A stretch of DNA of 64,000 nt from Macrostomum lignano (lineage: Eukaryota). The stretch spans positions 444,979 through 508,978 of the forward strand of contig NIVC01000620.1 in NCBI GenBank assembly GCA_002269645.1, read 5' to 3'. Below, piece by piece: positions 2 to 64,000 of the stretch; within the stretch, counting starts at the first letter, position 1, and every line of letters starts with the position of its first letter. The notes beneath the pieces were generated by a model. The model made no database searches. It was not told where the DNA came from and saw only the letters and a list, made by a program, of their open reading frames with translations. Position numbers and translations under genes: made by a program.

Positions 2-5299
<5,298 letters not shown>

Positions 5300-20181: not shown

Positions 20182-21304
20182 ATGTCACTAAAATGTCAAA
20201 AATTTACTCGGCGAGACAGAACTTTTACCACTTTACTTTTGGCTGCATGGCTGTTCGGCATGGCCCTGTATGGGCTGGCCTACAAAACGGCGACTGCAGG
20301 TGAGTCAAAACTTGTCCTTTTTCAAGGAGATCTCAACTTGAGCACCAGCACGAAGTAAAGCTCAGATTTTGTGCTGCTAGTGGACTTAGGAGTTTGAAGT
20401 TTAAAGCAACCAATAATTTTCGATATGTGCAGATTTCTGGATGTTTGACAGAGATTTTGTTAGAACTTTAGAATCCATTCTAGAGTTTTAAGTTGGTATA
20501 AAATCCCCATTTTGAGCCTAGGAATGCAGGAGCCTTGATTTTCGGCTTTTTCGGGTCAAATTAGTCCGACAAGTTGTCGATTGAACATCTGTTGCAATTC
20601 TAAATAAAATATTCGATTATCTCTTGTTGATTAATATTTGAAAATATCGGTCTCGTGTTGCAATGAAGGCGGAATTCTACATGTAAATGTCAGCTATACA
20701 TTCAGAGGCAGAATGTGCTTTTTATGTTAAAAAAATCCAGCTCATAGGTGTTAAATGCTTCCTTCGCCTTTGCAAGCAATTCTTATCTAAACCGAGTCAT
20801 TTTTATAAGTTCAGAATGTAAACAGCATTAAATAGCTCTGCCTTTAATAGCAGCTGATGCCTCAAGGTACGGTAGAATGCTAGATTACAGGTGTAAATGT
20901 ACATTACTGTCTACAGCACAAGAGAAGAAAGAATCAATTAAACTGGATTGACAGTAGTCTAGGTGATGTCGGTAACTTGAAAAGGTTTTCCACCAACCAT
21001 GACTACCATTTGATCTTCCACCAGGTTTAACGTCCCAAGGTGACAATCCGTCCGACTTTAACTTTGGAACCAGTGTCGATGAAAGCAGTTCGCACCTGCG
21101 ACACCTACTGTTTGTTCATGTTCACAGCAATTGTACGCCTCGATCAGTGGAGACTTACCCACCTGACCTGTTCACTCTGGAGCAGAAACAGCACGGAGCA
21201 ATTATTATTCATATTGCAGTTGCCGTGTGGCTGTTTGCCGCTTTGGCTGTGATCTGCAATGACTACTTTCTGGCTTCAATGGAGGTGCTTTGCGATGGTA
21301 AGTG

Positions 21305-21348
<44 letters not shown>

Positions 21349-21385
21349 GCTACTACTACTACTACTGCTACTACTACTACTACTG

Positions 21386-21447
<62 letters not shown>

Positions 21448-21490
21448 GCTACTACTACTACTACTACTGCTACTACTACTACTACTACTG

Positions 21491-21568
<78 letters not shown>

Positions 21569-21569
21569 T

Positions 21570-21619
<50 letters not shown>

Positions 21620-21630
21620 TTACTACAACA

Positions 21631-21703
<73 letters not shown>

Positions 21704-21706
21704 TTG

Positions 21707-21747
<41 letters not shown>

Positions 21748-21750
21748 GCG

Positions 21751-21814
<64 letters not shown>

Positions 21815-21815
21815 T

Positions 21816-21881
<66 letters not shown>

Positions 21882-21908
21882 CACTACTACTACTACTACT
21901 ACTACTAT

Positions 21909-21995
<87 letters not shown>

Positions 21996-24900: not shown

Positions 24901-26102
24901 TGTCGAAGACCGGGCATTTGGAGGCGCCTGTTCCCGCTGACTCTGGTCTCTAGCGTGGCCTGGATATCCGGGATAAGCTATCTCATGGTGTGGATGGTCT
25001 GCGCTGCGGGCGACGCACTGGGCATCCCGGACACAGTGATGGGGCTCACTCTGCTGGCCGCCGGCACCTCTGTGCCTGACTGCATGGCCGCTGTCTTTGT
25101 CTCTAAAGGAGGTGTGCAAAAACTTTTGATTGGAGAGTGGGGCTACTACGAGTATTACGAATAGCTATAGACACAAACACACACACACAAGCACACACAC
25201 TGTCCCTTGAAGGCTGGGACTCTGAGCAGATATTATTTAACTTCAAACTTAAACCAATTTGCGTGCAAAAAGCCCTATAGGATACTGCATCTGCAACTGG
25301 GAGGTATCTACAAAACCCATTAAACAATGAGACAGTTTGTGACTAGACATGCCAATGCTTTGACCCCCCGCGCCCCAGATTGTGACTCGTTGTGGAAATC
25401 AATATTTATGCTTCAGGGCGCCAAAATATAGCGCTATCGGCACCAAAATGAATCTCAAAATAAATGCTTGCCTGCGGCGCCAAAATGAGTGCCTGTCATT
25501 TCGTGCCTGTCTGTGGCGCCAAAGTGAGTGCCTGCGGCGCCAAAATGAGTGCCTGCGGCACTAAAAGAATGCCAAATGCTTTGATTCCCAAAACGTTGTA
25601 GAGTTTTTTATTTTGTCCCCCCATATAAAAAATCCATGCCGACATCCCGGTTGGCCAGAATGCAGAGGTGTAGCAAAGGAATTCCAGGGCTTTTCGAGGA
25701 AGTTCAGTCGCCCAACGAACAACGATGCAAATCAATAAATATTGAAACTTCTCGTTCAACTTTGCAGGACTGGGCGATATGGCGGTATGCAACAGCATTG
25801 GCAGCAATGTGTTCAACATCCTCATCTGCTTAGGCCTGCCCTGGTTAATCAGCACCGTCATTATCGAGCCTGGAAGCTCAGTTATCATCAATTCGTCTGG
25901 TCTAACGTATTCTTCCATCACCCTGTTCTCCACAATAGTATTCCTGTTCATCATTGTCTATTATAACAAAATGCAATTGAACTTTCGTCTGGGACTTACC
26001 TGCCTCATTGTTTACCTAGTAGTGACGACATTGTCGTGCTTGTACGAGACTAACGTGTTTGGACCATTGAATCCGCCGCCGTGTCCCAGGACGCGGATGT
26101 GA
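20182..26102 (+). CDS. SLC24A: SLC24/NCKX-family exchanger, paralogue 2 (about 525 aa, 6 exons)
   Basis: Exons 20182-20299 (start ATG uncertain), 21025-21297, 22026-22314, 23390-23625, 24785-25111, 25768-26102; total 1578 nt in frame. alpha-1 GATFMAGSSSAPE...GSAVFN; alpha-2 AAGTSVPD...GLGDMAVCNSIGSNVFNI...LGLPW. Exon 3 (289 nt) and the last exon (335 nt) match paralogue 1 in length. Confidence 0.92.
21305..22000. repeat. (CTA)n trinucleotide microsatellite in NCKX-2 intron 2
   Basis: Lies between donor gtaagt (21298) and acceptor ttcag (22025); the poly-Y/T/L/S/V ORFs are artefacts. Confidence 0.95.
22840..23197 (+). mobile_element. Full-length tRNA-derived SINE (about 358 bp) with a 13-bp target-site duplication
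   Basis: Head GGGGGGCCGTAGCCCAGCGGTAG (A-box-like) and GGCTCGATTCC (B-box-like); tail ctaataataaaa; TSD aaggcgcaaccca at 22827-22839 and 23198-23210; two more copies in the window. Confidence 0.88.
23690..24650. repeat. Polypurine 22-to-24-bp minisatellite (gatcgagagaagagggggagagag) in NCKX-2 intron 4
   Basis: Period 22 near 23830 and 24 near 24135; almost entirely purine. Confidence 0.92.
25417..25562. repeat. Short degenerate repeat of about 20 bp (gcggcgccaaaatgagtgcct) in NCKX-2 intron 5
   Basis: About 5 imperfect units. Confidence 0.6.
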
Positions 26103-40399: not shown

Positions 40400-41598
40400 A
40401 GAACATCCCATCTCCGTAAAAGACTCTCCGCTGCCGCTCTGACCGCTCTGACTTTGTCAAATCTGCCGCTGATTCTCTGCTGCTGCATCGCTCTCGGCCA
40501 CTCGCTCGAATTCGGCCACTTGAGCTGCTTTGTGGACGAAGAAACTCCAAACCGAGACCTCACCGGTCTTGTTGGCTTATCCATTGTCGGACCTTACTCG
40601 AAGACACCGGAGGAGGGGGACGTCGCACTTTATGGCAGCTTGACTTTAGAAGTTTGCACGAAATCTGCACGTATGGAAAATTCCGGTACTTTTCCGTTCA
40701 GTATTCAGGTGCTTGCTTCTGCGGAAACTCGTACGGCAGATTCGGCAGGGCAGCCGACAGCGACTGCAACATGGCCTGCGCTGGCAACTCCGCCCAAATC
40801 TGTGGAGGGACGTCGCGAAACTCTGTGTACCCGCAGGTCTACAATCGTTCAGGTGAGCGTAACGGAATTGCAATCGATGCGGTTCTACTTCTACACGTAC
40901 ATGTACTTTTCCAGCTGCACTGGGCACAGCATCCATGGTTTAGCACGCGTTTGCTTCAGCATTAAATATTAAGATTTCAAAGCATTTCACAAAGTCAAAC
41001 TAGATTTCTGATCCAACACAGATAAACAAATATAATTAATTTTCCGTAGGGCTCCGGGCACGCTATTAGAACGCTGTCAAAAAATGGTTTCACAACCAAA
41101 GGTTTTGTCAATCTTCAGCCCGTTCTGCTGATTTCTGGGCACGTATAAGAGCACGGATAACTGTACGAACTCATACATGTACACTCTCTGTGCCTTGGGA
41201 TTTAGCACTCCTAGGTGTGAGCGCGCAACGAACACTGAGCCAATTTTTCAAAAGAAAATATACAGCCAGAGTTTGAATGCAGTTTCAGCATGTGACTGAC
41301 TACAGTCGACATGTCGAAGGTCTCACAAGAGTAGCGGTGCACCACTCAATGTCTTTTTTTCCTTTCAGATAGCAAGCATTTCATTTTGGCTGACCGAGAC
41401 TACGTGAACCTGACCTCTACCAGCGGCCCGTTCTACCGCACCGAGCAGCCCGTCAGGAGTTTGACTGAGTACGTATATCGCTGCGTCACAGACTGCCAGG
41501 CCGTGCTGTTCCACCTGGACGCCTGCCACCTGCTGAGATTCGCCGTTCTGCCACACGAGCTGAAGAACGTCGCTGGGATGTTCGTCACCCGCGTGTGA
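40400..41598 (+). pseudogene. WSC plus PAN/Apple-like gene, copy 3, with a 1-nt frameshift at about 40657 (pseudogene or assembly error); start codon not found
   Basis: ...LILCCCIALGHSLEFGHLSCFVDEETPNRDLTGLVG...LTLEVC continues in another frame as HEICTYGKFRYFSVQYSGACFCGNSY...CAGNSAQICGGTSRNSVY; donor at 40853; exon 41369-41598; same intron phase as copies 1 and 2. Confidence 0.7.
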
Positions 41599-41639
41599 GG
41601 GACCGCCAGATTCGGAGCAAGGAGACTCGGTTGCTGAAG

Positions 41640-43030
41640 CCTCTGATTGGTGAACTCTGTGATTTCTGACACCCTCTGATTGGTGAACTCTGTGATTTCT
41701 GACACCCTCTGATTGCTGCAATTCTGTGATTTCTGACACCATCTGATTGCTGCAACTCTGCAATTTCTGACACCATCTGAGTGCTGAATATTGTGAATTC
41801 TGACACCATCTGAGTGCTGAACTCTGTGATTTCTGACACCATCTGATTGCTGAACTCTGTGATTTCTGACACCATCTGATTGCTGAACTCTGTGATTTCT
41901 GACACCCTCTGATTGCTGAACTCTGTGATTTCTGACACCCTCTGATTGCTGAACTCTGTGATTTCTGACACCATCTGATTGCTGAACTCTGTGATTTCTG
42001 ACACCCTCTGATTGCTGAACTCTGTGATTTCTGACACCATCTGATTGCTGAACTCTGTGATTTCTGACACCATCTGAGTGCTGAACTCTGTGATTTCTGA
42101 CACCATCTGATTGCTGAACTCTGTGATTTCTGACACCATCTGATTGCTGAACTCTGTGATTTCTGACACCATCTGATTGCTGAACTCTGTGATTTCTGAC
42201 ACCCTCTGATTGCTGAACTCTGTGATTTCTGACACCATCTGATTGCTGAACTCTGTGATTTCTGACACCATCTGATTGCTGAACTCTGTGATTTCTGACA
42301 CCATCTGATTGCTGAACTGCGTGATTTCTGACACCCTCTGATTGCTGAACTCTGTGATTTCTGACACCATCTGATTGCTGAACTCTGTGATTTCTGACAC
42401 CATCTGATTGCTGAACTCTGTGATTTCTGACACCATCTGATTGCTGAACTCTGTGATTTCTGACACCATCTGAGTGCTGAACTCTGTGATTTCTGACACC
42501 ATCTGATTGCTGAACTCTGTGATTTCTGACACCCTCTGATTGCTGAACTCTGTGATTTCTGACACCATCTGATTGCTGAACTCTGTGATTTCTGACACCA
42601 TCTGATTGCTGAACTCTGTGATTTCTGACACCATCTGATTGCTGAACTCTGTGATTTCTGACACCATCTGATTGCTGAACTCTGTGATTTCTGACACCAT
42701 CTGATTGCTGAACTCTGTGATTTCTGACACCATCTGATTGCTGAACTCTGTGATTTCTGACACCATCTGATTGCTGAACTCTGTGATTTCTGACACCATC
42801 TGAGTGCTGAACTCTGTGATTTCTGACACCATCTGATTGCTGAACTCTGTGATTTCTGACACCCTCTGATTGCTGAACTCTGTGATTTCTGACACCATCT
42901 GATTGCTGAACTCTGTGATTTCTGACACCCTCTGCTTGCTGAACTCTGTGATTTCTGACACCCTCTGATTGCTTAACTCTGTGATTTCTGACACCATCTG
43001 AGTGCTGAATATTGTGATTTCTGCAAATCT
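41640..43030. repeat. 33-bp minisatellite (tctgattgctgaactctgtgatttctgacacca), about 42 units
   Basis: Period 33; one minus-strand frame is stop-free, (MVSEITEFSNQ)n. Confidence 0.95.
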
Positions 43031-44556
43031 AACCACAGTTAATATATTTACTCCTGGCGTGTCACCTGAGTTCCAAAAAAATAAATATTTTTTGCTGCCA
43101 AAAAGAAAGAATTCTAGCGGCTTCTGAGCAGTAGCTTAATGGCATATAAATTTCTTTTTTTATCTTGATCGATCGACATAACGGCAGTAGTAGCAACCAA
43201 AGCAGATATTGCTGCCACACTATCGACTCTAGCATTATCAGGCATCAGATTTACAGCAGCGAATTAACTGAAGAAACTTCTCAATTCACACGGAGCTGCT
43301 GTATGAGCTATTGTAACACTCGAATATCACACCAGTTTCTACGAGTATAAGGCTAGCACCCCAGATGTTGCGAAAAAAATTTAGAGTGTTATACTTCGAT
43401 ATACTACTTGCACAGCAGAAGCCACAATAGCTTCTGTAGGTGACATCTCAGGTGTGTATACTATCTATTATTTACACACCTTGAAACGTATAGCACCTGT
43501 ATCATTTATTTACTTTAGTACACTTACAAAGGGAATTGAGAATATGAATTGCAGCACTCGATGGATTAGAATGATAAAGCTGTTAGTTAGTTTAACAGCA
43601 GTTAGTGAGCAGGCTAAATACAGGTATAATAATTAACACCAGGAATTCCTAACCATTTTTCTGCCCGTCGAAATACCATGGATTCAAAGGCATTTTTTGC
43701 TTCTGCAGTACGCAAGAAGGCAGATACACGAATTTCAAGGACACATGGGCTTGTTTGCTTTTTGCACCTGGCGCCATTTCAATCAAGAACCAAGTAGTTA
43801 GACACTCCAGACAGTCGAGATATTCAACAGTTGTGCTTGTGTCACCTGGTGTCACCGAAGGCCCACAACCTTTTGAAGTCATAGCAGATGCATCCACGTG
43901 TGGTTGAGATGCTGATAAAATTTTGAGACGCAGTGCTTACTTGAATACACTTGTATCGAAACAAGTCTGAATATTCCCTCACCTTTGAAGTTCTACCGTT
44001 AAAGCACCGAGTAACAAACACACATTCCCTTGCAAACAACGTGAAAATGTTAAAATCTGGTGAGACAGTGTTTTTCAAGCAAAGTTAAGCGTAGTCTAAA
44101 TTTGTTTGTAAGCAGAGTTAGCTTTGCAAAGCTCACTAGCTACAATGTGAGTAAGTTTTAAATAAATTAGTGCTAGGAGTCAGATTTATTTCGTATTTGT
44201 AGCTCCATCTGATGAGGTAGTGACAGTCGACTGGGTATTGAAGTCTACGACATTTGCCCGCGGGAAGTCTTCACAGGAACTTCACAGGACCTTGAGATTA
44301 GGCGAATTAGGGAAGACTTATCTCCACCTAGTCACGAATCTTATCATTCAGTCGATCATCTGCAGCCACGTTTATCAATTAAGAGTTAATTATAAAGTGT
44401 ATTATTAATCTAAACTGCTGATAAATTTATATAGTCAAGGTATATAACTATACTACTATAGATGATAACTTTATCAGAATCGAATAATAATCATCACTCA
44501 ATCTAAATCTTATCTGGAGTTGTCTTATCAGCGTTATTAATTTACTTGTACCGCAT

Positions 44557-50655: not shown

Positions 50656-53600
50656 ATGGAGCCGGACTCTTCTAAAGGAGTCGAAGTGCCGAATGATGGC
50701 GATCCGATGGTATCGTTTGAGCCTCAGCCGACGCCGCCGCCACCGCCATCAACGCAGCCTCCGCCGCCAACACAGCCTCCACTGCCAACGCCACCAAATG
50801 ACGACGACTGCAAACGTGAACTACTGCTTCAGCTGACACAACAGAAGAAATTTGATGACGCAAAGAAGATTATACAAAGTTTAAAGAACACAGCTGCACC
50901 TTTACGTCGAGATCAGCTGCTACGGACAGCTGTTCACTACTCCGCGATGGATCCAAGCGGGTTTGAGCTATTGAAGGATCTCACAGAACTGGTTGGCGCA
51001 GGCTGCTTGGCAACCCCAGACCGCAATGGAGTGACTCCGTTTCACTTCGCAGCGCAATATCTGCCTGATAATGCCTGGAATACATTTATTAACCCGCTTG
51101 TAACGGAAAGCCATCTTAAGAAGAGAGATAACGCAGGAAATACTTGCGCACACTATGCAGTCCGCGAACAGCGTGCCAATGATGGAGTAATACTTTCTAT
51201 AGTCCATAAGTCGGGGCCGAGATGCCTGGATGTTTCAAATGAGATTAAAGAGACGCCTCTTCAGCTTGCGGTAAAAAACTGCACCTCAAAAACAGTTAAA
51301 AAGCTGTTGAAAGAGCTCAATCCGAGGTGGCTTCAGGAGGCAGATGAAGAAGGCAACACAGTAGCACATTACGCGGCCATGAACCCGAGAGGCGCGGTAC
51401 TTAAAGTTGTAAAAAAAGTGGGCGATCCCGTTCTTTTTTGGTCTAACAATCACAAAGAAACCGTTTTACAAATAGCGCTTCAGTTCTGCTCGATTTCGAA
51501 ATCGCACTTGCTTCTGAAAAAAGCTGTAGCAAAGGCTGCTAAATTGCCAGGGTCGAAAGAGTCGAAAAAACTCCGGCAGCAGGATTCGACTGGAAAGACA
51601 TGCTTACACAGTACAGCGATGCTTAGCGACAGGCAAGAAATTCTGCTTCAGGCAGTAGAGTTAGGGAAGCCACTCGGACCCGAATGTCTAGCCTGGAAGA
51701 ACCAAGCCGGAAGTTCAGTGCTGCACGTTGCACTTGAGCATGGCCGCCAGTCCGAACCCGCAAGCACAGAAGTCTTAGTCAAATTGATTTCAAAATCTAC
51801 AAAAGACGTTCTAGCAAAGGTTGATGCAAACGGTAATACATGTCTTCACATAGCCGCTAAGAGGAGAGACAATCATCGATTGTTACGTGAGGCTATCCAG
51901 AAGTGCGGAAAAGATTGCATGTTCTGGCCAAACAAAAGAAATCAATTGGTAATGTTCTTTGCTATTGGAGTTGTCTCTTCCAAAGAACTAGAAGAGGCAT
52001 TGAAGAATGACATCCCTTCTGACGATTTCGGCAACACTCTGTTGCATTACCTCCTTCAAGGCTACAGCAGCGAGTCAGTCTGTGTTGGCTTAACCGATTC
52101 TGCAATCGAAAAGCAGTCTACAACTGATATTCTTGAGAAGATCGATATCCTTATTGCTTTTGGCGTGGATCCACTTGAGGAGAATATTGCCGCTCAAAAC
52201 TTTCTACATTGGGCTAAGTTGCCGCAAAATTTGCTTAAGAAGCTTTTAACAGATTTTTCCGAATCTCATGGGCTTAAGGCCCTGTACGAAAAGCTAGATT
52301 GTGGGTCAAATGGACTCCACTTGGTTCACACGTACTCAAGAAAGTACAATTTGGAAGTTTTATTAGAGCCATTATCGAAACTGTCGGATTTAAAAGAAAA
52401 TAGACTTTTGAGCTTGGCTGTTTCCAAGGGCGACAACAAGGGTGCCACCTGTTTTCATTTCGCCTGCGAAGGTGGCCAAACAAGCAGTTTTCGATTCTTA
52501 TTGAAAAAAGGTCCAAATATTAGCGTCAGCATCAAGACGCTGACAGATTCCGAACTGTCTTGCATTGACTTTGCTATTGATAGAGGTCACCTCGAGCCGG
52601 TAATGAAAGTCTATACAGAATTTGAAGCTAAGGCACTTCAGAAAAAAGGAATAGGCTCCAAAGCAGCATCAAATGCCGCAAGAATTACTCTCTTGCGCCT
52701 CGTTGATCCGATTAAGAAGGCCGTCTCGCTGCCGGACCGGGTGGCAGCTCAGAAAGCGCTTGCTTCAATAATCGACCAGCTATCCGACGATTCAACTGCC
52801 TGTCGGAAGGGCAGAAGAGGCCTGCAAATACTAGAAAGGGCGATAACGCTCAACTCAACAAAACTATTTCGCAGCGCTTTAAAGATGAACTTTGTTAACG
52901 CCACAACGGAGAGACTTTTGCCAGAGTTCTTGCGCTGCCAGCAGCATCGAAATTTAGAGCTAAGCGTGATAAATTGCCTGTGCATGGGTGACAAAATTGG
53001 AAGGCACGGTTGGGTCGATGCTTTTTCTGAGTTGTCTGTCATTGACATTACATGTTCACACTCTGAGCACTACGATGAGATTTTGTTGGACTTGGTACTC
53101 ACTAGGCAATTTGAGCTGATTCCGGCCAGCATTAACCTACTCATCAGGCTGGGCCCCGAGATCGACAAGCTACGCTCGCAGGCACGTGGCAAGCACGCTA
53201 CGCTGCAGGAGTTGTACAGAAAAGTGCAGGAAATCGCTGTCAATTCTCTTGAAGAGTTGTTCGCTAGCGCTACTCAAAAGCGTCAGCGAGAGCTTCTCTT
53301 TGAGTTCCTTCAGGGTCGAATCGAAAGCGCAGAAGGCGTGTCCGGTCCCAAGTTTCCATTTAGAACTCTAAACAAGAAAATAAGGCATGGCGCCGTAACA
53401 GACATGATTGAGGAAGCTGACTGTAACGAGATTTTCGCGACAGACTGCATCTACAGCTTGGTGCAGCAGGAGTGGAAGACTGGACGAAGGCCCTGCAGGT
53501 GTAGCACATGCTCAGTTTCGAATAGCAAACAAAGTAGTGAAGACTGCTGCTGCAGGTGCACCCGCGAGTTCTATTCACCGCGAGCAAAATTCGGGACTTA

Positions 53601-54843
53601 CTGTACCTTTTTCGCCTTTCTAATTATATACTTTACATGGTACACGGTTGACTTCAAAAATAGTTTCGCCCACATTTCAACTGACATTCCTTTGATATTC
53701 TATTGGCTATCCTTCGTTTCCCAAGAAGTTGTCGACTTCCGCAGACGGCGGAAGCGGCGCAGCTATCTCGTATGCGGCCGCCTCTGCAGATGGCCCACTT
53801 ATTTTGAGGACTTACTGAACTTTCTAGAATGGCTCGTAATCGTTTTTTTACTGGTTGGTCTGATTTTGAAATGGATACTGCTTGCTAATTCGCTACCTTT
53901 AACTGCAGCATACCCCTGTCAGATGGTATTTAGCGTCGCTTTCGGTCTGCTAATGTTTCGGGCAGTGCACTTTCTGAGCCTATCAGCCGTCATTGGTCCT
54001 GTAATAACGATGCTATGGAGTCTAGTATTCAATGACTTGCTGCCATTTCTGGCAATTATCGCCGTCATCATAATCGCTTTCGGAGTGTTTTTCTTCAACC
54101 TACTTTTCTCTGTGACTGGAGTGAACACCCAGTCAACTTACTACAACAGTCCTTGGTACAGCTGGGACGCCACTGTTGCAGCGATAACTCTACCATTTAA
54201 CATACTGTTTACAAACTTTGAGAAGCTAGAATTTGGGAAGACGTTAACGAATATCACGATTGGAAAATCAGCCCACACGCAAGGAATCGGAGTGTTTGAG
54301 AATCTGATGCTGTTCCTTTTCATGGGCTGGTGAACATTGTTATGCTGAACCTACTGATCGCGCTCTTCAACCTTCGGGTCAACCGCATGGCTAATGAAGC
54401 TCTGGGGATCTGGCGAAGGACGTACTTCGGCATGCTGAAGGAGTACCAAAACTTGAGTCCGGTTCCGCCACCGCTGTCATTTCTGTGGTACATCTACGAT
54501 TGCTTTGTGAGAAAATGCTCTTGCAAAAAATGTAAAAACTCTGCGGGAGTGGCTCCGAAGAAGAAGGTTTGTTTTGTTTTTTTAATGGCGCGGTGACTCA
54601 GTAGGCTAATTGACAATTGTTTTGTCTCTATTTCAGACCGAAAACTGGTGGCGTGACCCTAAAAAGTATCCCGAGGAGTACATGGATTTTCTGGAGTTCC
54701 AAGCTAACCAATTAAGGCGGTTCCGCGCTTCTCTGCTATCCAATTCCAACTCCAATAGCCGAGATGATCTCATTGATCAATTGAGTCATCGATTGAAAGT
54801 ACTGGAAGAACAGACTCAGGCGGTACATGAGAAGCTGAAGTAA
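50656..54843 (+). CDS. TRP-superfamily cation channel: Pro-rich N-terminus, about 15 ankyrin repeats, TRPM-like 6-TM region, TRP box and short coiled coil (about 1372 aa after correcting a 1-nt frameshift at about 54325)
   Basis: Exon 50656-54566 and exon 54637-54843 (phase 0). Ankyrin motifs DRNGVTPFHFAA, DNAGNTCAHYAV, DANGNTCLHIAA; pre-S1 FYSPRAKF; S3 YFEDLLNFLEW; S5 NDLLPFLAII...AFGV; S6 NIVMLNLLIALFN; TRP box IWRRTYFGMLKEY...PVPPPLSFL. Confidence 0.88.
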
Positions 54844-55669: not shown

Positions 55670-57535
55670 ATATCCCCTGCCACCGATTTCCAGTCACTAA
55701 TTCCCCTGCCACCAATTTCCTGTCACTAATTCCCCTGCCACCGATTTCATGTCACTAATTCACCTGCCACCAATTTCATGTCACTAATTCCCCTGCCACC
55801 GATTTCATGTCACTAATTCCCCTGCCACCAATTTCCTGTCACTAATTCCCCTGCCACCGATTTCATGTCACTAATTCACCTGCCACCAATTTCATGTCAC
55901 TAATTCACCTGCCACCAATTTCATGTCACTAATTCCCCTGCCACCGATTTCCTGTCACTAATTCCCCTGCCACCGATTTCCTGTCACAAATTCTTCTGCT
56001 ACCAATTTCCTGTCACTAATTCCCCTGCCACTAATTTCCTGTCACTAATTCCCCTGCCACCGATTTCCTGTCACAAATTCCCCTGCCACCGATTTCCTGT
56101 CACTAATTCCCCTCTGCCACCGATTTCCTGTCACTAATTCCCCTCTGCCACCGATTTCATTCCCCTGCAACCGATTTCCTGTCACTAATTCCCCTGCCAC
56201 CAATTTCCTGTCACTGATTCCCCTGCGACCAATTTCCTGTCACTGATTCCCCTGCCACCGATTTCCTGTCACTGATTCCCCTGCCACCAATATCCTGTCA
56301 CTAATTCCCCTGCCACCGATTTCCTGTCACTAATTCCCCTCTGCCACCGATTTCCTGTCACTAATTCCCCTGCCACCGATTTCTTGTCACTAATTCTCCT
56401 GCCACCGATTTCCTGTCACTAATTCCCCTCTGCCACCGATTTCCTGTCACTAATTCCCCTCTGCCACCGATTTCATTCCCCTGCAACCGATTTCCTGTCA
56501 CTAATTCCCCTGCCACCGATTTCCTGTCACTGATTCTTCTGCTACCTACTTTATGTCACTAATTCCCCTGCCACCGATTTCCTGTCACAAATTTCCCTGC
56601 CACCGATTTCCTGTCACAAATTCCCCTGCCACCGATTTCCTGTCACAAATTCTTCTGCTACCAATTTCCTGTCACTAATTCCCCTGCCACCGATTTCCTG
56701 TCACTAATTCCCCTTTGCCACTGATTTCCTGTCACTAATTCCCCTGCCACCGATTTCCTGTCACTAATTCCCCTCTGCCACCGATTTCCTGTCACTAATT
56801 CCCCTGCCACCGATTTCCTGTCACTAATTCCCCTCTGCCACCGATTTCCTGTCACTAATTCCCCTGCCACCGATTTCCTGTCACTAATTCCCCTCTGCCA
56901 CCGATTTCCTGTCACTAATTCCCCTCTGCCACCGATTTCCTGTCACTAATTCCCCTGCCACCGATTTCCTGTCACTAATTCCCCTCTGCCACCGATTTCC
57001 TGTCACTAATTCCCCTGCCACCAATTTCCTGTCACAAATTCCCCTGCCACCGATTTCGTGTCACAAATTCCCCTGCCACCGATTTCCTGTCACTAATTCC
57101 CCTGCCACCGATTTCCTGTCACTAATTCCCCTCTGCCACCGATTTCCTGTCACTAATTCCCCTGCCACCGATTTCCTGTCACTAATTCCCCTCTGCCACC
57201 GATTTCCTGTCACTAATTCCCCTGCCACCGATTTCCTGTCACTGATTCCCCTGCCACCAATTTCCTGTCACTAATTCACCTGCCACCAATTTCCTGTCAC
57301 TGATTCCACTGCCACTAATTTCTTGTCACTGATTCCCCTGCCACCAATATCCTGTCACTAATTCCCCTGCCACCGATTTCCTGTCACTAATTCCCCTCTG
57401 CCACCGATTTCCTGTCACTAATTCCCCTGCCACCGATTTCCTGTCACTAATTCCTCTGCCACCGATTTTCTGTCACTAATTCCCCTGCCACTAATTTCCT
57501 GTCACTAATTCCCCTGCTAGCAATTTCACGTCACA
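55670..57535. repeat. 29-bp satellite (attcccctgccaccgatttcctgtcacta) with 31-bp variants
   Basis: Period 29 (55811 to 55840); 29/31 alternation at about 56700-57200. Confidence 0.95.
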
Positions 57536-57559
57536 AATTCCATGAGCGCTTCTTGTCTG

Positions 57560-57740
57560 TGGGTGAGCGCCCCTGCCTCTGGGTGGGGGTGCCCCTGTAT
57601 CTTGGTGGACGCCCATATCTTTGAGTAGGCGCCCATATCTCTGGGTGAGCGCCCATATCTCTGGGTGGGCGCCCCTATCTCTGGGTGGGCGCCCCTATCT
57701 CTGGGTGGGCGCCCCTATCTCTGGGTGGGCGACCCTGTCT
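57560..57740. repeat. 20-bp GC-rich repeat (ctgggtgggcgcccctatct)
   Basis: About 8 units abutting the 29-bp array. Confidence 0.85.
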
Positions 57741-59621
57741 CTGACTGACTGACTCCCATTATTTTCATCAAGTTAAACAACCTAATTAGGCACTTAACGT
57801 AAATTCTAAATTTGCAGATCGCTCTCGTACTGTATGGACCACTAGCAGTAGGCTGCCAGCGTTTTTTGTGTGTTCGTCCTCCAAATCTTACGATTATCAA
57901 TATTTGACATACATGTAGTTTTGCTTATTAACGTATTTTTAGGTCACATATTGTACTCTCTCAGGGATTACTAGCTCGTATTGAGGTATTTGAATTTTTA
58001 GTCTTCATGATGAAGTTGTCAATCATTTTTACAACGGGTTTTATAAGTTTTGGCCCAGAAAGTCTGAAAAGGTCATGTGATTTTCGAATTTAGTTCTTAT
58101 TATTCTTCGTTGATATGGAATCAAAGATCATTGTTCTGGTCTCACCAGACAATCACGTCGACCTCCGCGGTAACTGAAATTATTGATCCAGTCAATAATG
58201 AGAAGCGAAATTGTTTATATTGACTAAGATCGGTAGATGTACACGAAAAATATTTGAGTGCAAGATTACAAACTCAATGATAAAAAACAAACATCGTTCA
58301 ACAAAGTAATTTAAGCAAGACTATTTAATTAAAAATTCGATACCTGCTTATTTCATTCAATCATAGTTTGATTTGTTCTTCCAAAAACAATAAAGCCATC
58401 GGCCTACGCGAAAGTCCTTCATCGCTAGAGTTATATTTCCAGTTCGTGATAATCATTTCCCATGTCCCACGCACTCAAATCCCAGTTCCTATTTAGCACT
58501 TACTTATCCCAGCTCTATATCGACCAAGTAATTACCGGAACTCTAATCCTACTCATTTTTTTCGCACCTATCTTACCATCCTCATCTACTTTCCAATCCT
58601 CCTCTCCATCTCTGTCATTCGCGTGCAGAGTCCCACAGTTCTTCCCTCAGCCCTTAGCAACAGCAATTTTCCACGAATCCTATTCCCGATCACCCGATAG
58701 GCCTCCCAGCGTCCTCGCTTAGTGCTGTACCATGCTTATATGGAGTATTTTTCCATAAAAGTATCTGGCCACTTCAGGCTCTTCCGCGCAGCTCACTTCC
58801 CTCATCCTCTCTCTCTCTCTGTTCCTCATTCGCTCTCCCCTCCTACTTAAGCTACCTTCAGTCTCTGCTTGCGCATGATCCCGCAGCAAAAAAGTGTCTA
58901 TAAGCCCTTAGGCGCTATTTCTGCTCCCCCTCTTAGCCTTCGTCCTCCGGAATATCCTCCGGTCGGGTCTCCCCATCTCTTCCTCTTGATCGCCCCGGCC
59001 CGTCCCCTCTTCACATCGCTCTTCAATTTTGCGGCCCCAGCCAGCGGCTATAAAGTCAGAAAGCGTCCAACAAACCTAATTTACTGCAGGCCCCGTTCAG
59101 GAGAGAGAATTAAAAAAAGAGCAGCATATACAACGGCTGCAACCGCGTCCTCGGCTCTTTTCCAGCAGAGCGCGGAGCCACCTGGACTTTGGCGAGTAAA
59201 AAGCTCCGTCAGAGTGTCTAGGTGGATCCAGCAACGGTGAAGCTGTAACGTTTTAACCTCCCCTTCCCCAATTCGACTTTTTACCCCCCCCCCCTCCCTG
59301 CCTGGCCGGTGGGCCATCCAGTTGTGTCCCAGCACGGCATCGAAGCTTCTCTATTTGTTCCTTTTCTTCCAGACTGAACGGTTGCACGAAATTTAACCTT
59401 TTTTGATTACTGGATGCCCCACACAGCCTATATTTAGAGATTGCAACATGCCATGTAGCAGCAGTACGTCTAACCTTCGCTTCGCATGTAAACATTGATA
59501 TATTCATCGCTAACGTACTAAGGTAAGTGTAATCATAATTTTTTCTAATTGCTAATGGGCTAGTTAGGTTATTAAGTACTGTTTCCTAAAAAAATATGTA
59601 GATGACAATGAGACAACGACA

Positions 59622-59820
<199 letters not shown>

Positions 59821-59902
59821 ACTATGACAGACAGTTGACCAAAAGCTATCAGCTATCAGCTAATCGCGTCAACTCACTTCCAGAACGTCAGCCGTGTAGA
59901 GC

Positions 59903-60302
59903 ATGTCGTTCGTGTCTTCCCGAACCACGAGTGACTGCGATAACAACACGGGTGGCGGCGACGACTTCAATGCAGCAGCTTCGAGAGGTTCACCCGTGAC
60001 AGGCCTGTCCGTGCTCAACAGTCAGGACTCAGAGATGCAGATGCAGCTTGCCAGGCTATCCCGTCTGATGGCTCCAGCCGGTGGAAGCTCCACTGCGCTG
60101 CCACTAGAGTGCGACGCTGGATTCGAGAGCTCTTCTCTCTGCGGCAATTTCAACAATGTCGACCCGGAGTCCGATGATCGACCGACAGCCAAACAGAAGC
60201 GAGTAGCTCGCGTGGTGATGGCTGTCGCCTTCATTCTGCTGTCAATGTGCTTCGTGCTGATTGTTGTCACGCTGTCAATGTCTGATCACATTGACAGAAT
60301 GG
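59903..60302 (+). CDS. Coding exon of a small single-pass membrane protein; downstream exon(s) unresolved
   Basis: ATG-initiated Ser/Gly-rich segment, then KRVARVVMAVAFILLSMCFVLIVVTLSMSDHIDRM and donor gtgagt at 60303. Confidence 0.6.
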
Positions 60303-60374
60303 GTGAGTTTCCGGGAAGTGTGTTGAAATTAAAAAAGCGCATCTTTTTCTTCTGTCTACAGCATTGGAAAACGA

Positions 60375-60640
60375 CTATTAGCACACTTCTCTCTTTACTC
60401 ACCGTACTCTACTCTCTACTCACTGTACTCTACTCTCTAATCACTGTACTCTACTCTCTAATCACTGTACTCTACTCTCTAATCACTGTACTCTACTCTC
60501 TAATCAATGTACTCTACTCTCTACTCATTGTACTCTACTCTCTAATCAATGTACTCTACTCTCTAATCACTATACTCTACTCTCTAATCACTGTACTCTA
60601 CTCTCTAATCACTGTACTCTACTCTCTACTCATTGTACTC
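60375..60640. repeat. 21-bp minisatellite (ctctactctctaatcactgta), intronic
   Basis: Tandem array; gives the spurious LYSLITV tail of ORF 59903-60643. Confidence 0.9.
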
Positions 60641-61829
60641 TAATTTATACTCACTAAACTCTAATCTCTGCTTTCGATCCAAAGATGAGACGGGATTGAA
60701 GGGTTGAGGTCTCTCTGCCCTAGACGCTTACGGAAAGGTTATTAATAGGCTTTTAGGCCATGCATTGGTTTCCATGCCTTGTTTCTATTCTACTCGTAGA
60801 GCATTGTTATAATTGTTATAATGACCAAGGAAGAAGCATTGCCAAAGAATGTTATTTCTTCGGTGAAAAGTACCAACTAACAGAATGCAAATCGGAATGA
60901 AGGCTAAATGCTGATTACCTTATCAACTGAAGACTTATAAACGTAGACTTCTGGAAGACTCGACACTGAAGCTTAGGAATATTGGCTATAATGCTTTTAA
61001 AATCTTGAAAAAAATACTCTGGTATATTTAGCTTCTCAATCTTCTTACTAAGAAGTAGCAAGAAAAGAATATAGTTTTTCTCCTTTAGTTTCCTCAAGAA
61101 ACTATTCAATCTGCATTTTATCTCTTTACTATAATTAGAGATAAATTACAAGCATTGATTGTTCATTTCAGTTCGAAAAGCTCTAATGCACAGTCTGAGC
61201 AAGGCCAGGTCGCAGTCAAGCTCAAAGTTGTCATCGGAGTTTCGACAGACTTGGAATTTGGCTACCACTGCAGCATCAGCAACCGATAACTGATTGATGC
61301 AATGCAGATTCGTTTTAGTATATTTAAGAATACCGAAACCAAAAAACGCTGTGGGCTGCAAATGACAACATTGCTTGTTTATTTGTATGCTGTGTAACGT
61401 ACATGTACTGCTCGATTTAAACTAAATTAAGTGATTCCTGTTTTGCGTTCATGGCTTAAAAATCATTATGAAGGTAAATAAAAAAGCTAAAGGTAATATT
61501 ACTCGTAGATCGCGGCTCATTTCCCACGGTGAACTAGTAAAAGTAGGTTAAGTGTAGGCAGAAGTGTAGCTTCTGGTGTCAAGTGGTTAAAATGAATAAA
61601 AAGGTTTCTTGAGAGGCGTCTGAAGAGTCTAAGTGCCACGCATTAAAGGAAAAGTAAAACTCAATTAAACGGATACTATACTCGTATGGAATCAGCTTTG
61701 AATTTTGTTAACAAACGTAATTATTGGTTAGAGGTTACGTTTATAATTATAGAAAACGCCTGCTAGAAAAAGAACACAGCAAATTCTATAGAGTCTTGTA
61801 AGAAAGTAAACTCTGCAAAACCACAGGAG

Positions 61830-62841
61830 CTACTGACGCTGCACCATGCACGCCTCCAGCCAGTCGTCGCGCACCCTCGCTTCGTTCACTTGGCTAATAC
61901 CATTGCGCAACTCGATAAGATCTACGTCATCCGGCAGTTGGCCAAGTATGAAGATGCAAATTCGAGCAAGAGGCCGGTAGATAATTCCATAGTTGTCCTG
62001 CTGAAGGAATTCTTGCTGATTAAAGTCGATCCTGGCCACCTTTTGGGGAGATTCGTCCAGCCGCTGCCAGCCGGTGTTGTCATCCCAGTGCGGGAAGGTG
62101 ACAAAAAACCAAAACTTGCCTGGCTCCGCATCTTCCAGAGTTTCTAAGACTCTCTCGGCAGTGGCGTTCAGCACAGGCTCCACAAAGGGCGGGCCGAGAC
62201 TCCAGCCGCCCGGATATCCGGACAGGTCGAGGCGGAAGAAGTTTCCCAGACTGCAAACGCGGCGTCAGTGTCATTGAACAGGCTGCAGAACTTGACGCCA
62301 TCTCGTCCCAGAAGGCGGCAGTTCAGAGGCGACGAGAAGCCCTCATAGGTGACGTGGCCAACGTCGTACAGAGCGTCGAGTCCCGACACGCACATGCCAG
62401 ACTCACCGCCGTAGAACTTGCACAGATGAGCGTAGCGGAGGCACATCAGCGCAGTCGCGTCAGTGCCGTATGTTTGCGCCAGGTAGCGAATTCGAAGACA
62501 ATTCCGGGTTTGGAAATCACCCACGAATAATTTTCCACTGGTTCCGCTCTCGGTGTATCGAACAGCAACATCAGGCAGTGGTTCATCCTCGAGATCAGTG
62601 CCCAAAATTCTTCGATACTGTCGAACACCTGGTTGGATATTCTCTTTGCCGTATCTTCATTCGCGCGTAAATTCTGTTGCAGCATCCTCTCCAGTTCCGT
62701 CCTGAGGTTTTCATTAAACGGTTGCTGTGGCAACAACGGATAGGCAGCTTCTTGATCCGCTGTGTTGAAGAGTTGCACGATTTGCAGAAACCTACCAAAC
62801 ACGTTTAATGCGGCATTCTTGTGCTTATTCTCGGACCCCAT
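61830..62841 (-). CDS. Intronless PCIF1/CAPAM-like methyltransferase-domain protein (about 337 aa after correcting two 1-nt frameshifts)
   Basis: Three overlapping minus-strand ORFs fuse by adding one T at 62604-62607 and one G at 62254: ...MCLRY...YEGFSSPLNCRL...FCSLFNDTDAAFGSLGNFFRLD...GWSLGPPFVEPVL...FFVTFPHW, matching the PCIF1 pattern LLRY / ECFASPLN / YCSAFPDTD..FGSRG / NPPF.EELM / F....P.W. Confidence 0.75.
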
Positions 62842-64000
62842 TTAGGAAGGGCTGTTCGAAAGTCTTGAAAAAGTGTTTCGATAAAATTGTATTGTCGCAT
62901 CTCTTTGGCGATTTTTTCCGGTTCTATTCCAGCGAATTCGCCATTATTTTCACACGGCTTGATTGTCTCAGTAATCGTTAGGGTAGTTTAGAGTGCAGAT
63001 ATTTGCAGCTCGGTGTTTTTTCAATGGCCTGTATTTATGTCGTTGCTCTCCAGCCGGTAGAGATTTTCATCGTTTATATTTCCAAGAAATGAAACAAAAT
63101 CTACGACAATAAAAATTCTCGCTGACGCGAGCGAGGGCAGGGAAATGTACAGTTTTGCAACTGAGGCAAAATTCCAGGAAATGGCTACTGTACATAACTC
63201 AGATCCAAATAACTGGATGTATAGTCTCTTCGGCCTGAAAATTGTTTTTTTTAACTAGAAACAATAGCCCAAGTGGCGCGCGCCGCCACTCGCTCATTGT
63301 AGGCAGCGCTAGAGCAGCTTATGTCCAGACAAAAAGTGCGCACAGTTATGTTCTTACCCCAAAAAGTCTGACCCCCGGCCTCAGTTCGTCTTTATGCAAA
63401 AGAGAGAGGCATACGAAGCTGCCGTGAAATGCGCAAGTACCTGCCGCAAAGTTTTGCTAGATTAATTTCAAATATATGATGAGACCATCTTCAATTCGAG
63501 CACAAGAACGACGACTTAACTGGACAAGCTTTTTATCTTCGAGTACTATTAGTAGCATTTAAAGCTCGACACTTCGAATGATGGAAACTTAAAGCTTAAT
63601 CAAGTGGTATTTTCTGGAATTTTGCAGATACAAGCATCTGATAACTGGTCATTTCGGACATTGATTTTTAAAACTAGGATGACTGTAGGGAAATTATTTT
63701 GAAGACAATTTCACTTCTAGGATTATAAACTCAAAGCTGAAGTTTCTAATCGGTGTCATATCTTAACTGCAACAGGTACAAACAAGATTAATAATTATAT
63801 TTGCAGGAGGGTTGTGGGCACCCTTGCATAGCATCTTCCCTGAAATAGCTCTACAAACAGCACTGAGACAATTCTGCCTCAGTCTTTTTGTCTTTTTGTT
63901 TTCAGTCTTTTCTGTCTCACTCCGGAGCACATTAGCACGCTTCAAACAAAAGTGTACATCGTCTCTGACTTTCAAATCGTCAGGAATGTAACACTATGTG

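What the first reader, a model, noticed from the sequence alone, without database searches (positions are those of the whole stretch)
61830..62841. Intronless PCIF1-like methyltransferase domain with GPPF replacing the catalytic NPPF
Seen: a stand-alone domain of about 337 aa with no WW domain and no introns, GC-richer than its flanks, retaining EGFSSPLN and FCSLFNDTDAAFGSLG but reading GGC CCG CCC TTT (GPPF, 62184-62195). Known: PCIF1/CAPAM makes cap-adjacent m6Am using an NPPF motif whose Asn is catalytic; stand-alone PCIF1-like domains are, to my recollection, also found in protists and large DNA viruses. Inference: a retrocopy or horizontally/virally acquired gene that is either a catalytically dead cap-binding factor or decoy, or an enzyme with altered chemistry.
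Basis: partly seen in the sequence, partly recalled or inferred. Interest (0 to 1): 0.78.

Follow-up and report, generated by a model that had tools for sequence, protein, structure and literature searches.

The report
Flatworm stand-alone PCIF1-like gene with GPPF
This is one copy of a tandemly repeated flatworm (Macrostomum lignano) gene for a small PCIF1-like RNA-cap methyltransferase whose catalytic asparagine is genuinely replaced by glycine in every copy; the frame breaks in this copy are almost certainly assembly errors, so it is a modestly interesting probable pseudoenzyme, not a decayed retrocopy.

Summary
The minus strand of 61830-62944 encodes a stand-alone PCIF1/CAPAM-like protein with no WW domain and no intron, and 62184-62195 reads GGC CCG CCC TTT (GPPF).

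The window is the last 64 kb of contig NIVC01000620.1 of Macrostomum lignano (assembly Mlig_3_7). The gene is a copy of Mlig015920, already deposited as intact 372-aa "PCIF1 WW domain-containing" proteins.

- **Frame breaks.** The window copy differs from the intact copy on NIVC01003467.1 by four single-base deletions and no substitution. Over 8.2 kb there are 23 indels and 0-1 substitutions. This points to long-read consensus error at a contig end, not decay.
- **The glycine is real.** All eight genomic copies read GGC. Diverged tandem copies give pN/pS 0.34 over the domain.
- **Relatives.** The sister paralogue (Mlig030305) and about 80% of 127 related domains keep Asn. The closest relatives outside Macrostomum are stand-alone proteins from metagenomes. 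Several of these lie on giant-virus-like contigs. Vertebrate PCIF1 is much more distant.

Best reading: a conserved, probably non-catalytic or weakly catalytic paralogue that keeps the PCIF1 fold. A retrocopy origin is not supported. An ancient viral origin is possible but unproven. Interest is modest.

The parts
61830..62944 (-). Coding sequence of one copy of the M. lignano Mlig015920 gene, a stand-alone PCIF1/CAPAM-like protein of 372 codons in intact copies. In this window the frame is broken by four single-base deletions. There are no substitutions, insertions or in-frame stops relative to the intact copy.
   Evidence: Global alignment to L002:6001-7119 (NIVC01003467.1) gives 0 mismatches and 4 one-base deletions. 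The intact products are PAA51302.1, PAA75858.1 and PAA53933.1.
62600..62921 (-). N-terminal helical part (aa 9-116 of the intact protein). It corresponds to the helical domain that precedes the methyltransferase domain in CAPAM.
   Evidence: The AlphaFold model has helices H9-32, H39-61, H79-93 and H97-116. Foldseek alignments to 6irw/6irv span about 418 alignment columns, gaps included. Coordinates were mapped.
61941..62563 (-). Rossmann-type methyltransferase part (aa 129-336). It contains the Pfam PF12237 match (aa 166-311 = window 62452-62016).
   Evidence: The window pieces alone hit PF12237.
62184..62195 (-). Motif IV position, reading GGC CCG CCC TTT = GPPF. Relatives have NPPF or NPPY here.
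62945..64000 (.). Spacer of the tandem array, upstream of the gene and running to the end of the contig. The next array copy lies beyond the contig end on sister contigs.
   Evidence: Window 64000-55839 aligns to L002 4944-13119 at 99.6% identity. L002 and L004 carry another copy further upstream. Window base 64000 is the contig end.

Best explanation
**What it is.** The locus is the last unit of a tandem array (period about 6.8 kb) of single-exon genes of the free-living flatworm Macrostomum lignano, gene family Mlig015920. Each unit encodes a 372-aa stand-alone PCIF1/CAPAM-like protein: a helical domain plus a Rossmann methyltransferase domain, with no WW domain.

**The breaks.** The four frame breaks in this window are most likely residual long-read consensus errors. 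The contig ends inside the array, and the same haplotype is assembled intact on another contig.

**The glycine.** The Gly replacing the catalytic Asn (GPPF) is a fixed feature of this subfamily. It arose after duplication from an NPPF paralogue (Mlig030305-like).

**Likely function (inferred).** The protein keeps the PCIF1 fold and most family-conserved residues, so it probably still folds and may still bind SAM and/or capped RNA. It has probably lost most or all N6-adenosine methyl transfer, because the Asn side chain that positions the target amino group is missing. It would then act as a non-catalytic paralogue (binder, competitor or partner) alongside the NPPF-bearing paralogues.

**Shown versus inferred.** Shown: identity, copy structure, motif state, conservation and predicted fold. 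Inferred: that the breaks are assembly errors (about 0.85), transcription, and loss of catalysis (about 0.5-0.6).
For: **Source organism.** The window is bases 444979-508978 (the end) of NIVC01000620.1 in GCA_002269645.1. NIVC is the Mlig_3_7 assembly: PacBio reads assembled with Canu and polished with Pilon, with 180 Mb of duplicated blocks at 95% identity or more (PMC5730564). The sister proteins are named Macrostomum lignano.

**Breaks as artefacts.**
- The coding sequence differs from the intact L002 copy by 0 substitutions and 4 one-base deletions.
- Across 8.2 kb there are 0-1 substitutions against 23 indel events, 17 of them bases missing from the window.

**Array structure.** L003 holds three copies about 6.8 kb apart. 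L002 and L004 each hold an upstream copy.

**Gly is fixed.** GGC occurs in all 8 genomic copies. GPPF occurs in all protein versions.

**Selection.** Between the diverged array copies, pN/pS is 0.34 over aa 111-372 (16 synonymous against 18 non-synonymous changes, Fisher p 0.0016).

**Family membership and fold.**
- PF12237 scores 89.3 bits.
- A profile of the family hits PCIF1 structures at E 1e-27.
- The AlphaFold model has mean pLDDT 86 and pTM 0.87.
- The best PDB folds are human and zebrafish CAPAM at E 2e-14.

**Conservation.** P0002 keeps 34 of the 39 columns that are at least 85% conserved in relatives. Asn to Gly is its only change in a column that is 100% conserved.

**Sister paralogue.** Mlig030305 has NPPF and groups with Mlig015920 in 96 of 100 NJ bootstraps.

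**Role of the Asn.**
- PCIF1 APPA and SPPG mutants are inactive (10.1101/485862).
- Mutation of N184 inactivates METTL16, and the family motif is D/N-P-P-F/W/Y (PMC8287941).

**Transcription (indirect).** The NCBI gene models derive from an RNA-seq-guided transcriptome assembly.
Against: - No activity or binding data exist for any member of this subfamily.
- In the cited PCIF1 mutants, Asn was changed together with Phe. The effect of Asn to Gly alone is therefore inferred. Backbone contacts of the PP motif could leave some residual activity.
- The selection signal rests on one paralogue comparison with few changes, and gene conversion within the array is evident (the domain parts of L003 copies a and b are identical).
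- An older, independently assembled model of the same gene (P0003, from the ML2 assembly) is also frame-broken. That is compatible with shared read-level errors, but also with a truly broken allele.
- Two other copies on L003 each show one frame break.
- Transcription is inferred from the annotation method only. With near-identical copies, reads cannot be assigned to this unit.
Confidence: 0.6

Rival explanations
1. The GPPF protein is still an active methyltransferase. It either keeps cap-adjacent adenosine N6-methylation through the backbone contacts of the PP motif, or it has shifted to a different substrate or chemistry.
For: - Purifying selection acts on the domain.
- P0002 keeps 34 of 39 family-conserved columns, including the P-P-F of the motif and the SPLN and FCSLF-D-TD blocks.
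- The predicted Rossmann fold is confident.
Against: - Asn is present in about 80% of the 127 aligned related domains (101) and in all 28 non-Mlig015920 sequences of alignment A1.
- No GPPF occurs outside this subfamily.
- Every characterised m6A/m6Am RNA methyltransferase has D or N at this position, and mutants lacking it are inactive.
Confidence: 0.2
2. The window copy is a genuine pseudogene: a recently inactivated unit or allele of the array whose four deletions exist in the animal's DNA.
For: - There are four frame breaks in 1.1 kb.
- An older gene model from another assembly of the same line is also frame-broken (P0003).
- NCBI annotated only a 131-aa product at this locus.
Against: - Zero substitutions in the coding sequence, and 0-1 in 8.2 kb, against 23 indels. 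That ratio fits long-read consensus error, not mutation.
- Indels occur on both sides of the comparison and in non-coding flanks as well.
- The locus lies 1-2 kb from a contig end, inside a repeat array, in an assembly known to be redundant.
Confidence: 0.12
3. Origin hypothesis, compatible with the best explanation: the whole M. lignano stand-alone PCIF1-like family descends from an old transfer from a giant virus (Nucleocytoviricota) or a protist. It would not descend from the animal WW-domain PCIF1 gene.
For: - Full-length P0002 scores 95-120 bits against metagenomic stand-alone proteins, but 36-42 bits against human and zebrafish PCIF1. Core identity is about 40% against 30%.
- Several of these relatives lie on contigs with dense ORFan genes plus topoisomerase II, Rpb5, TBP, a cap-methyltransferase-like gene and glycosyltransferases, which is giant-virus-like.
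- The fold matches stand-alone proteins of CroV, Tetraselmis virus 1, Bodo saltans virus, Hokovirus and others, with TM-scores up to 0.67-0.70.
- The Mlig015920 and Mlig030305 units are single exons, in a genome averaging about 5 introns per gene.
Against: - Identity to any viral-context protein is only about 40% in the core, so no recent transfer is visible.
- The two closest outside relatives (P0006, P0076) are on short contigs of unknown origin and could come from other animals.
- The genes sit in host context: an intron-bearing dynein light chain, ferrochelatase and an ankyrin gene.
- No viral hallmark gene was seen in the window, though only nine large ORFs were checked.
- The tree is a neighbour-joining tree on 137 columns rooted on two vertebrate sequences. 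It includes no invertebrate PCIF1 and gives no direction of transfer.
- The reverse direction, viruses capturing host genes, is equally possible.
Confidence: 0.25
4. The gene is a contaminant from an associated protist or virus, not from the flatworm genome.
For: - Its closest outside relatives are environmental sequences.
- Flatworm data sets are known to carry ciliate sequences (title seen).
Against: - It lies inside a 509-kb contig next to satellite arrays and other annotated genes.
- The same locus is assembled on four contigs, next to an intron-bearing dynein light-chain gene.
- Several paralogue families sit in other host contexts.
Confidence: 0.02

Closest known systems
Vertebrate PCIF1/CAPAM (human 6IRV/6IRW, zebrafish 6IRX-6IS0), the cap-specific m6Am methyltransferase
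   Same: - Same Pfam family, PF12237.
- Same two-part fold, a helical domain plus a Rossmann methyltransferase domain (Foldseek E 2e-14).
- Conserved SPLN and FCS-F-D-D-FGS blocks and the P-P-F of motif IV.
   Different: - No WW domain and no long linker: 372 aa against about 700.
- Only about 30% core identity.
- Gly instead of the catalytic Asn.
- Single exon, multi-copy, in a tandem array.
Stand-alone PCIF1-like proteins of giant viruses (for example CroV E3T4I2, Tetraselmis virus 1 A0A2P0VNQ5, Bodo saltans virus A0A2H4UTM5, Hokovirus, pithovirus-like genomes, salmon gill poxvirus) and of giant-virus-like metagenome contigs
   Same: - Same size and architecture: 300-450 aa, helical plus methyltransferase domains, no WW domain in most.
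- Higher TM-scores, 0.6-0.7.
- Sequence scores two to three times those to vertebrate PCIF1.
   Different: - The single-domain relatives that could be scored mostly have NPPF or NPPY.
- They lie in viral gene context, whereas this gene lies in a flatworm chromosome.
- Their function has not been demonstrated, as far as the library searched shows.
Macrostomum lignano paralogues with an intact motif: Mlig030305 (PAA48317.1), Mlig000263 (PAA56815.1), A0A1I8HAP9
   Same: - Same species, same architecture and same clade (NJ support 68/100 with two unknown outside sequences).
- Mlig030305 is the sister group (96/100) with 58% core identity.
- The Mlig030305 unit is also a single exon.
   Different: They keep NPPF.
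Drosophila Pcif1
   Same: It is a precedent for a PCIF1 homologue with a changed catalytic motif in an animal that lacks detectable m6Am. The protein is retained and considered non-catalytic (PMC9479742 citing Pandey et al. 2020).
   Different: - In the fly the change is Phe to His at the last motif position, and the Asn is kept.
- The fly protein is the WW-domain orthologue, not a stand-alone paralogue.
METTL14, the non-catalytic partner of METTL3 (comparison from general knowledge, not tested here)
   Same: It works like what is proposed here: a methyltransferase-fold paralogue with a degenerate motif IV, kept under selection for a non-catalytic role beside an active paralogue.
   Different: It belongs to a different family (MT-A70). 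No evidence exists here for any heterodimer.

Membership tests
PCIF1_WW / CAPAM family (Pfam PF12237) | Profile match above the curated gathering score | tested here: met
   The intact sister copy scores 89.3 bits against a cut-off of 31.1, E 3e-25. The window's own open stretches score 31.2 and 18.7 bits.
PCIF1_WW / CAPAM family (Pfam PF12237) | Helical domain plus Rossmann methyltransferase fold as in the CAPAM crystal structures | tested here: met
   The AlphaFold model has pLDDT 86.3 and pTM 0.87. The top six PDB matches are all CAPAM at E 2e-14 to 1e-11; the next hit is at E 0.015.
PCIF1_WW / CAPAM family (Pfam PF12237) | Catalytic motif IV, N-P-P-F/Y, with Asn | tested here: not met
   GPPF is aligned to NPPF of 6irv and 6irx. 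Asn is present in all 28 other sequences of alignment A1 and in 101 of 127 aligned domains.
PCIF1_WW / CAPAM family (Pfam PF12237) | m7G-cap-dependent N6-methylation of cap-adjacent Am | not testable with these tools
   No activity data exist for this protein or any stand-alone relative in the sources searched.
Canonical animal PCIF1 orthologue | N-terminal WW domain that binds the Ser5-phosphorylated Pol II CTD | tested here: not met
   Only PF12237 was found in P0002 at E 0.001 or better. The protein starts about 8 residues before the helical domain.
Canonical animal PCIF1 orthologue | Closest relatives are animal PCIF1 proteins | tested here: not met
   Vertebrate PCIF1 scores 36-42 bits, against 95-209 bits for metagenomic stand-alone proteins. 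None of the 94 hits with E 0.001 or better that were looked up carried an animal PCIF1 name, other than M. lignano itself. Invertebrate PCIF1 proteins were not compared directly.
Processed retrocopy | Poly(A) remnant or target-site duplication, and a multi-exon parent gene of high identity | tested here: not met
   No T-run lies on the + strand below 61830. No direct repeats flank the gene. Each unit sits in a 6.8-kb tandem repeat with conserved spacers. No parent gene was found.
Decayed pseudogene | Frame disruptions accompanied by substitutions relative to functional copies | tested here: not met
   There are four single-base deletions but 0 substitutions in the coding sequence, and 0-1 in 8.2 kb.
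Giant-virus stand-alone PCIF1-like proteins / endogenous viral insertion | Viral gene neighbourhood (hallmark genes, dense ORFan genes) | tested here: not met
   The window holds satellites, an ankyrin gene and low-complexity ORFs. None of the nine large ORFs scanned gave a credible viral-domain match. Sister loci adjoin host genes. This was only a limited scan.
Giant-virus stand-alone PCIF1-like proteins / endogenous viral insertion | Same stand-alone architecture and closer sequence and fold similarity than to cellular PCIF1 | tested here: met

The most novel reading that the evidence does not exclude
A flatworm lineage holds a giant-virus-type stand-alone cap-adenosine methyltransferase gene family, old and possibly exchanged with viruses. 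The family has expanded into tandem arrays. One sub-lineage lost the catalytic Asn yet stays under purifying selection as a non-catalytic cap- or SAM-binding regulator of mRNA or spliced-leader caps.
Probability: 0.2. Interest if true: 0.55.

Novelty: new variant of a known kind. Interest (0 to 1): 0.3.

Why it matters
If the GPPF proteins are conserved non-catalytic paralogues, M. lignano would offer a natural pair of active-type (NPPF) and Asn-less PCIF1-like proteins in one transgenic-ready animal. That pair would be useful for separating the catalytic and non-catalytic roles of PCIF1, a question already raised by the fly protein and by methyltransferase-independent effects in mammals.

The grouping of the flatworm family with giant-virus-type proteins also bears on how cap-modifying enzymes move between viruses and hosts.

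On the practical side, the case shows that frame breaks near contig ends of the Mlig_3_7 assembly should not be read as pseudogenisation. The genes themselves are already in public databases under an automatic PCIF1 name, so the gain is interpretive rather than a discovery of a new kind of system.

Tried and rejected
- **Word-indexed protein searches.** All three searches with the window's separate open stretches returned nothing but the window's own 131-aa product. The exhaustive HMMER search with one stretch was what found the family.
- **PDB searches with single stretches.** These gave only non-significant PCIF1 hits (E 0.14-1.2). They were convincing only because they were colinear, and were later confirmed with the intact sister protein.
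- **Weak hit to C. elegans C45G9.5 (9l35, E 0.47).** Dismissed as chance.
- **Other copies in the window.** tblastn found none.
- **Flanking direct or inverted repeats (mobile-element test).** None beyond satellites and one short palindrome inside the coding sequence.
- **Sequencing error at the Gly codon.** Rejected: eight copies read GGC.
- **Foreign base composition.** Rejected: GC and GC3 fall within the range of other coding ORFs in the window.
- **Literature.** No paper links PCIF1 with flatworms or names Mlig015920. The two papers that mention both PCIF1 and giant viruses only cite it in passing.
- **Frame-joined translation.** None was built. The intact database copies were used instead.

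Full report
**What is in the sequence**

The minus strand between 61830 and 62944 carries a coding sequence. Its open stretches hit Pfam PF12237 (PCIF1_WW) at 31.2 and 18.7 bits. They align colinearly to adjacent segments of human PCIF1 (PDB 6irv), placing the window's GPPF opposite the enzyme's NPPF. Bases 62184-62195 read GGC CCG CCC TTT on the minus strand.

**Where the window comes from**

An exact look-up of the neighbouring 1225-aa ankyrin ORF places the window at the very end of NIVC01000620.1 in GCA_002269645.1. NIVC is the Mlig_3_7 assembly of Macrostomum lignano line DV1. It was built from PacBio reads with Canu and polished with Pilon. It has 180 Mb of non-repetitive duplicated blocks at 95% identity or more, and its gene models come from an RNA-seq-guided transcriptome (PMC5730564).

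**Intact copies and the nature of the breaks**

The exhaustive HMMER search with one open stretch found 94 relatives. The best is P0002 (PAA51302.1, Mlig015920g3), a 372-aa protein annotated "PCIF1 WW domain-containing protein". Two cluster mates are g2 and g4.

The P0002 gene is a single 1119-nt exon on NIVC01003467.1. Against it:
- the window's coding sequence shows no substitution and four single-base deletions;
- over the whole 8.2 kb shared by the two contigs there are 0-1 substitutions and 23 indel events, 17 of them bases missing from the window and 6 missing from the other contig.

A ratio of this kind, at a contig end inside a repeat array in a redundant long-read assembly, marks consensus error rather than evolutionary decay.

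Caveats:
- An older gene model from the ML2 assembly (P0003) is also frame-broken.
- Two other copies on L003 carry one break each.
- Reads were not available to me.

**Array structure**

Contig NIVC01002998.1 (L003) carries three copies about 6.8 kb apart. L002 and L004 each carry a further upstream copy. The window's contig stops in the spacer just before that upstream copy. The four contigs look like redundant, haplotypic or homeologous versions of one array. Host genes adjoin the array and its paralogues: an intron-bearing dynein light chain, the ankyrin gene, and ferrochelatase.

**The glycine is real and conserved**

- All eight genomic copies read GGC at this codon. GGC is two changes away from either Asn codon.
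- Array copies that differ at pS of about 0.09-0.10 keep GPPF.
- They give pN/pS 0.34 over residues 111-372 (Fisher p 0.0016) and 0.44 over the whole gene.
- P0002 retains 34 of the 39 columns that are at least 85% conserved in 28 relatives. Asn to Gly is its only change in a fully conserved column.

**Relatives**

*Within M. lignano.* Other paralogue families keep NPPF: Mlig030305 (361 aa, single exon), Mlig000263 (three tandem units fused in one model) and A0A1I8HAP9.

*Motif census.* In a profile-based census of 127 aligned domains:
- 101 have Asn at the first motif position;
- GPPF occurs only in Mlig015920;
- a group of two-domain metagenomic proteins has V, H, F, I or A there, so loss of the Asn has happened elsewhere in the wider family.

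*Similarity scores.* Full-length P0002 scores 209 and 154 bits against two short contigs of unknown origin (P0006, P0076). It scores 95-120 bits against many stand-alone metagenomic proteins, but only 42 and 36 bits against human and zebrafish PCIF1.

*Context of the metagenomic relatives.* Four contexts were inspected. All are dense, mostly ORFan gene arrays. Among them they carry topoisomerase II, Rpb5, TBP, a cap-methyltransferase-like gene, glycosyltransferases and ankyrin genes, which is giant-virus-like.

*Tree.* A neighbour-joining tree on 137 core columns groups all M. lignano paralogues with P0006 and P0076 (68/100). It makes Mlig030305 the sister of Mlig015920 (96/100) and places the clade among the metagenomic proteins, with vertebrate PCIF1 on a long branch. 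This tree is rough, lacks invertebrate PCIF1 and cannot give a direction of transfer.

**Structure**

With a 30-sequence alignment, AlphaFold gives mean pLDDT 86.3 and pTM 0.87. The model has four N-terminal helices followed by an alpha/beta Rossmann-type domain. Foldseek finds only CAPAM structures at significant E-values in the PDB (2e-14 to 1e-11). The next hits (COMT, METTL16) are at about 0.02. In the viral library the best matches are annotated PCIF1-like proteins of Bodo saltans virus, pithovirus-like genomes, CroV, Hokovirus, Tetraselmis virus 1 and salmon gill poxvirus. TM-scores reach 0.67-0.70 for the stand-alone ones.

**How it most likely works**

In N6-adenine methyltransferases the first residue of the D/N-P-P-F/W/Y motif positions the target amino group. 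Supporting literature:
- PCIF1 APPA and SPPG mutants are inactive (10.1101/485862).
- Mutation of N184 inactivates METTL16, and motif mutants of METTL5 are inactive (PMC8287941).

A Gly offers no side chain. The most likely state is therefore a folded protein, possibly still competent to bind cofactor and cap, with little or no methyl transfer. It would be kept by selection for a non-catalytic role beside the NPPF paralogues.

This last step is inference. The rival is residual or altered activity.

Drosophila Pcif1 is a precedent for a retained PCIF1 homologue with a changed motif, although there the change is at the Phe and the protein keeps its WW domain (PMC9479742).

**Comparison and novelty**

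The gene is a member of PF12237 by profile and by fold. It fails two features of canonical PCIF1, the WW domain and the catalytic Asn, and it is not a retrocopy of an animal PCIF1. It works like, and resembles most, the stand-alone PCIF1-like proteins known from giant viruses.

The proteins are already deposited and automatically named. No paper in the library links PCIF1 with flatworms or mentions Mlig015920. The Asn-to-Gly subfamily is a new variant of a known kind and of modest interest.

**Limits**

- No reads, no expression tables, no other flatworm genomes and no invertebrate PCIF1 sequences were available.
- The viral nature of the metagenomic contigs is inferred from gene content.

Noticed in passing
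window 55673-57541, 57556-57743, 59618-59821, 60391-60669: Four tandem arrays lie just downstream of the gene: a 29-nt satellite (64 copies), a 20-mer (9 copies), (GACA)51 and a 21-mer (13 copies). The 246-aa ORF 59903-60643 is largely the 21-mer array read as protein, so it is probably not a gene.
   Followed up: partly
window 50656-54333 (+): A single-exon 1225-aa ankyrin-repeat ORF. It is annotated at NCBI with exactly this product. Such a long intronless gene is unusual in a genome averaging about 5 introns per gene.
   Followed up: partly
window 41585-43036 (-): A 483-aa ORF with many weak, mutually inconsistent Pfam hits (apolipoprotein, helicase IV N-terminal domain, and others). This is typical of a repetitive coiled-coil or low-complexity protein.
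   Followed up: no
window 1515-4283, 9919-13711, 21147-22350, 23664-24953: Clusters of long ORFs overlap in several frames and on both strands, in regions with extreme AT or GC skew. These are most likely simple or tandem repeats rather than genes.
   Followed up: no
L003 6001-20725 (NIVC01002998.1): The NCBI gene model for PAA53933.1 (Mlig015920g2) spans 14.7 kb across three tandem copies and does not translate colinearly. It appears to be a chimeric model that joins parts of different array units.
   Followed up: partly
L011 8001-14499 (NIVC01002568.1): Mlig000263 is modelled as one 1283-aa protein containing three PCIF1-like units, all with NPPF. Two of the units are interrupted by about 1.2 kb, while the third is contiguous. 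This could be a tandem array fused by the gene model or a true multi-domain gene.
   Followed up: partly
P0008, P0034, P0040, P0043, P0048, P0050, P0060, P0063 (metagenome proteins; L007 for P0008): Two-domain PCIF1-like proteins of about 650-750 aa carry V, H, F, I or A instead of Asn in one or both domains. P0008 lies in a giant-virus-like contig next to TBP and a cap-methyltransferase-like gene. Asn-less PCIF1-like domains are therefore recurrent outside the flatworm.
   Followed up: partly
P0014 (VVB70519.1): A 313-aa stand-alone PCIF1-like protein with NPPF is deposited as 'uncultured archaeon', on a 5.9-kb contig. The taxonomic label looks doubtful for a family otherwise seen in eukaryotes and giant viruses.
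   Followed up: no
P0003 (UniRef A0A1I8J898): The older ML2-based model of the same gene is a 1170-aa mis-prediction. It starts in wrong frames, then reads the true domain including GPPF, and runs on into unrelated sequence.
   Followed up: partly
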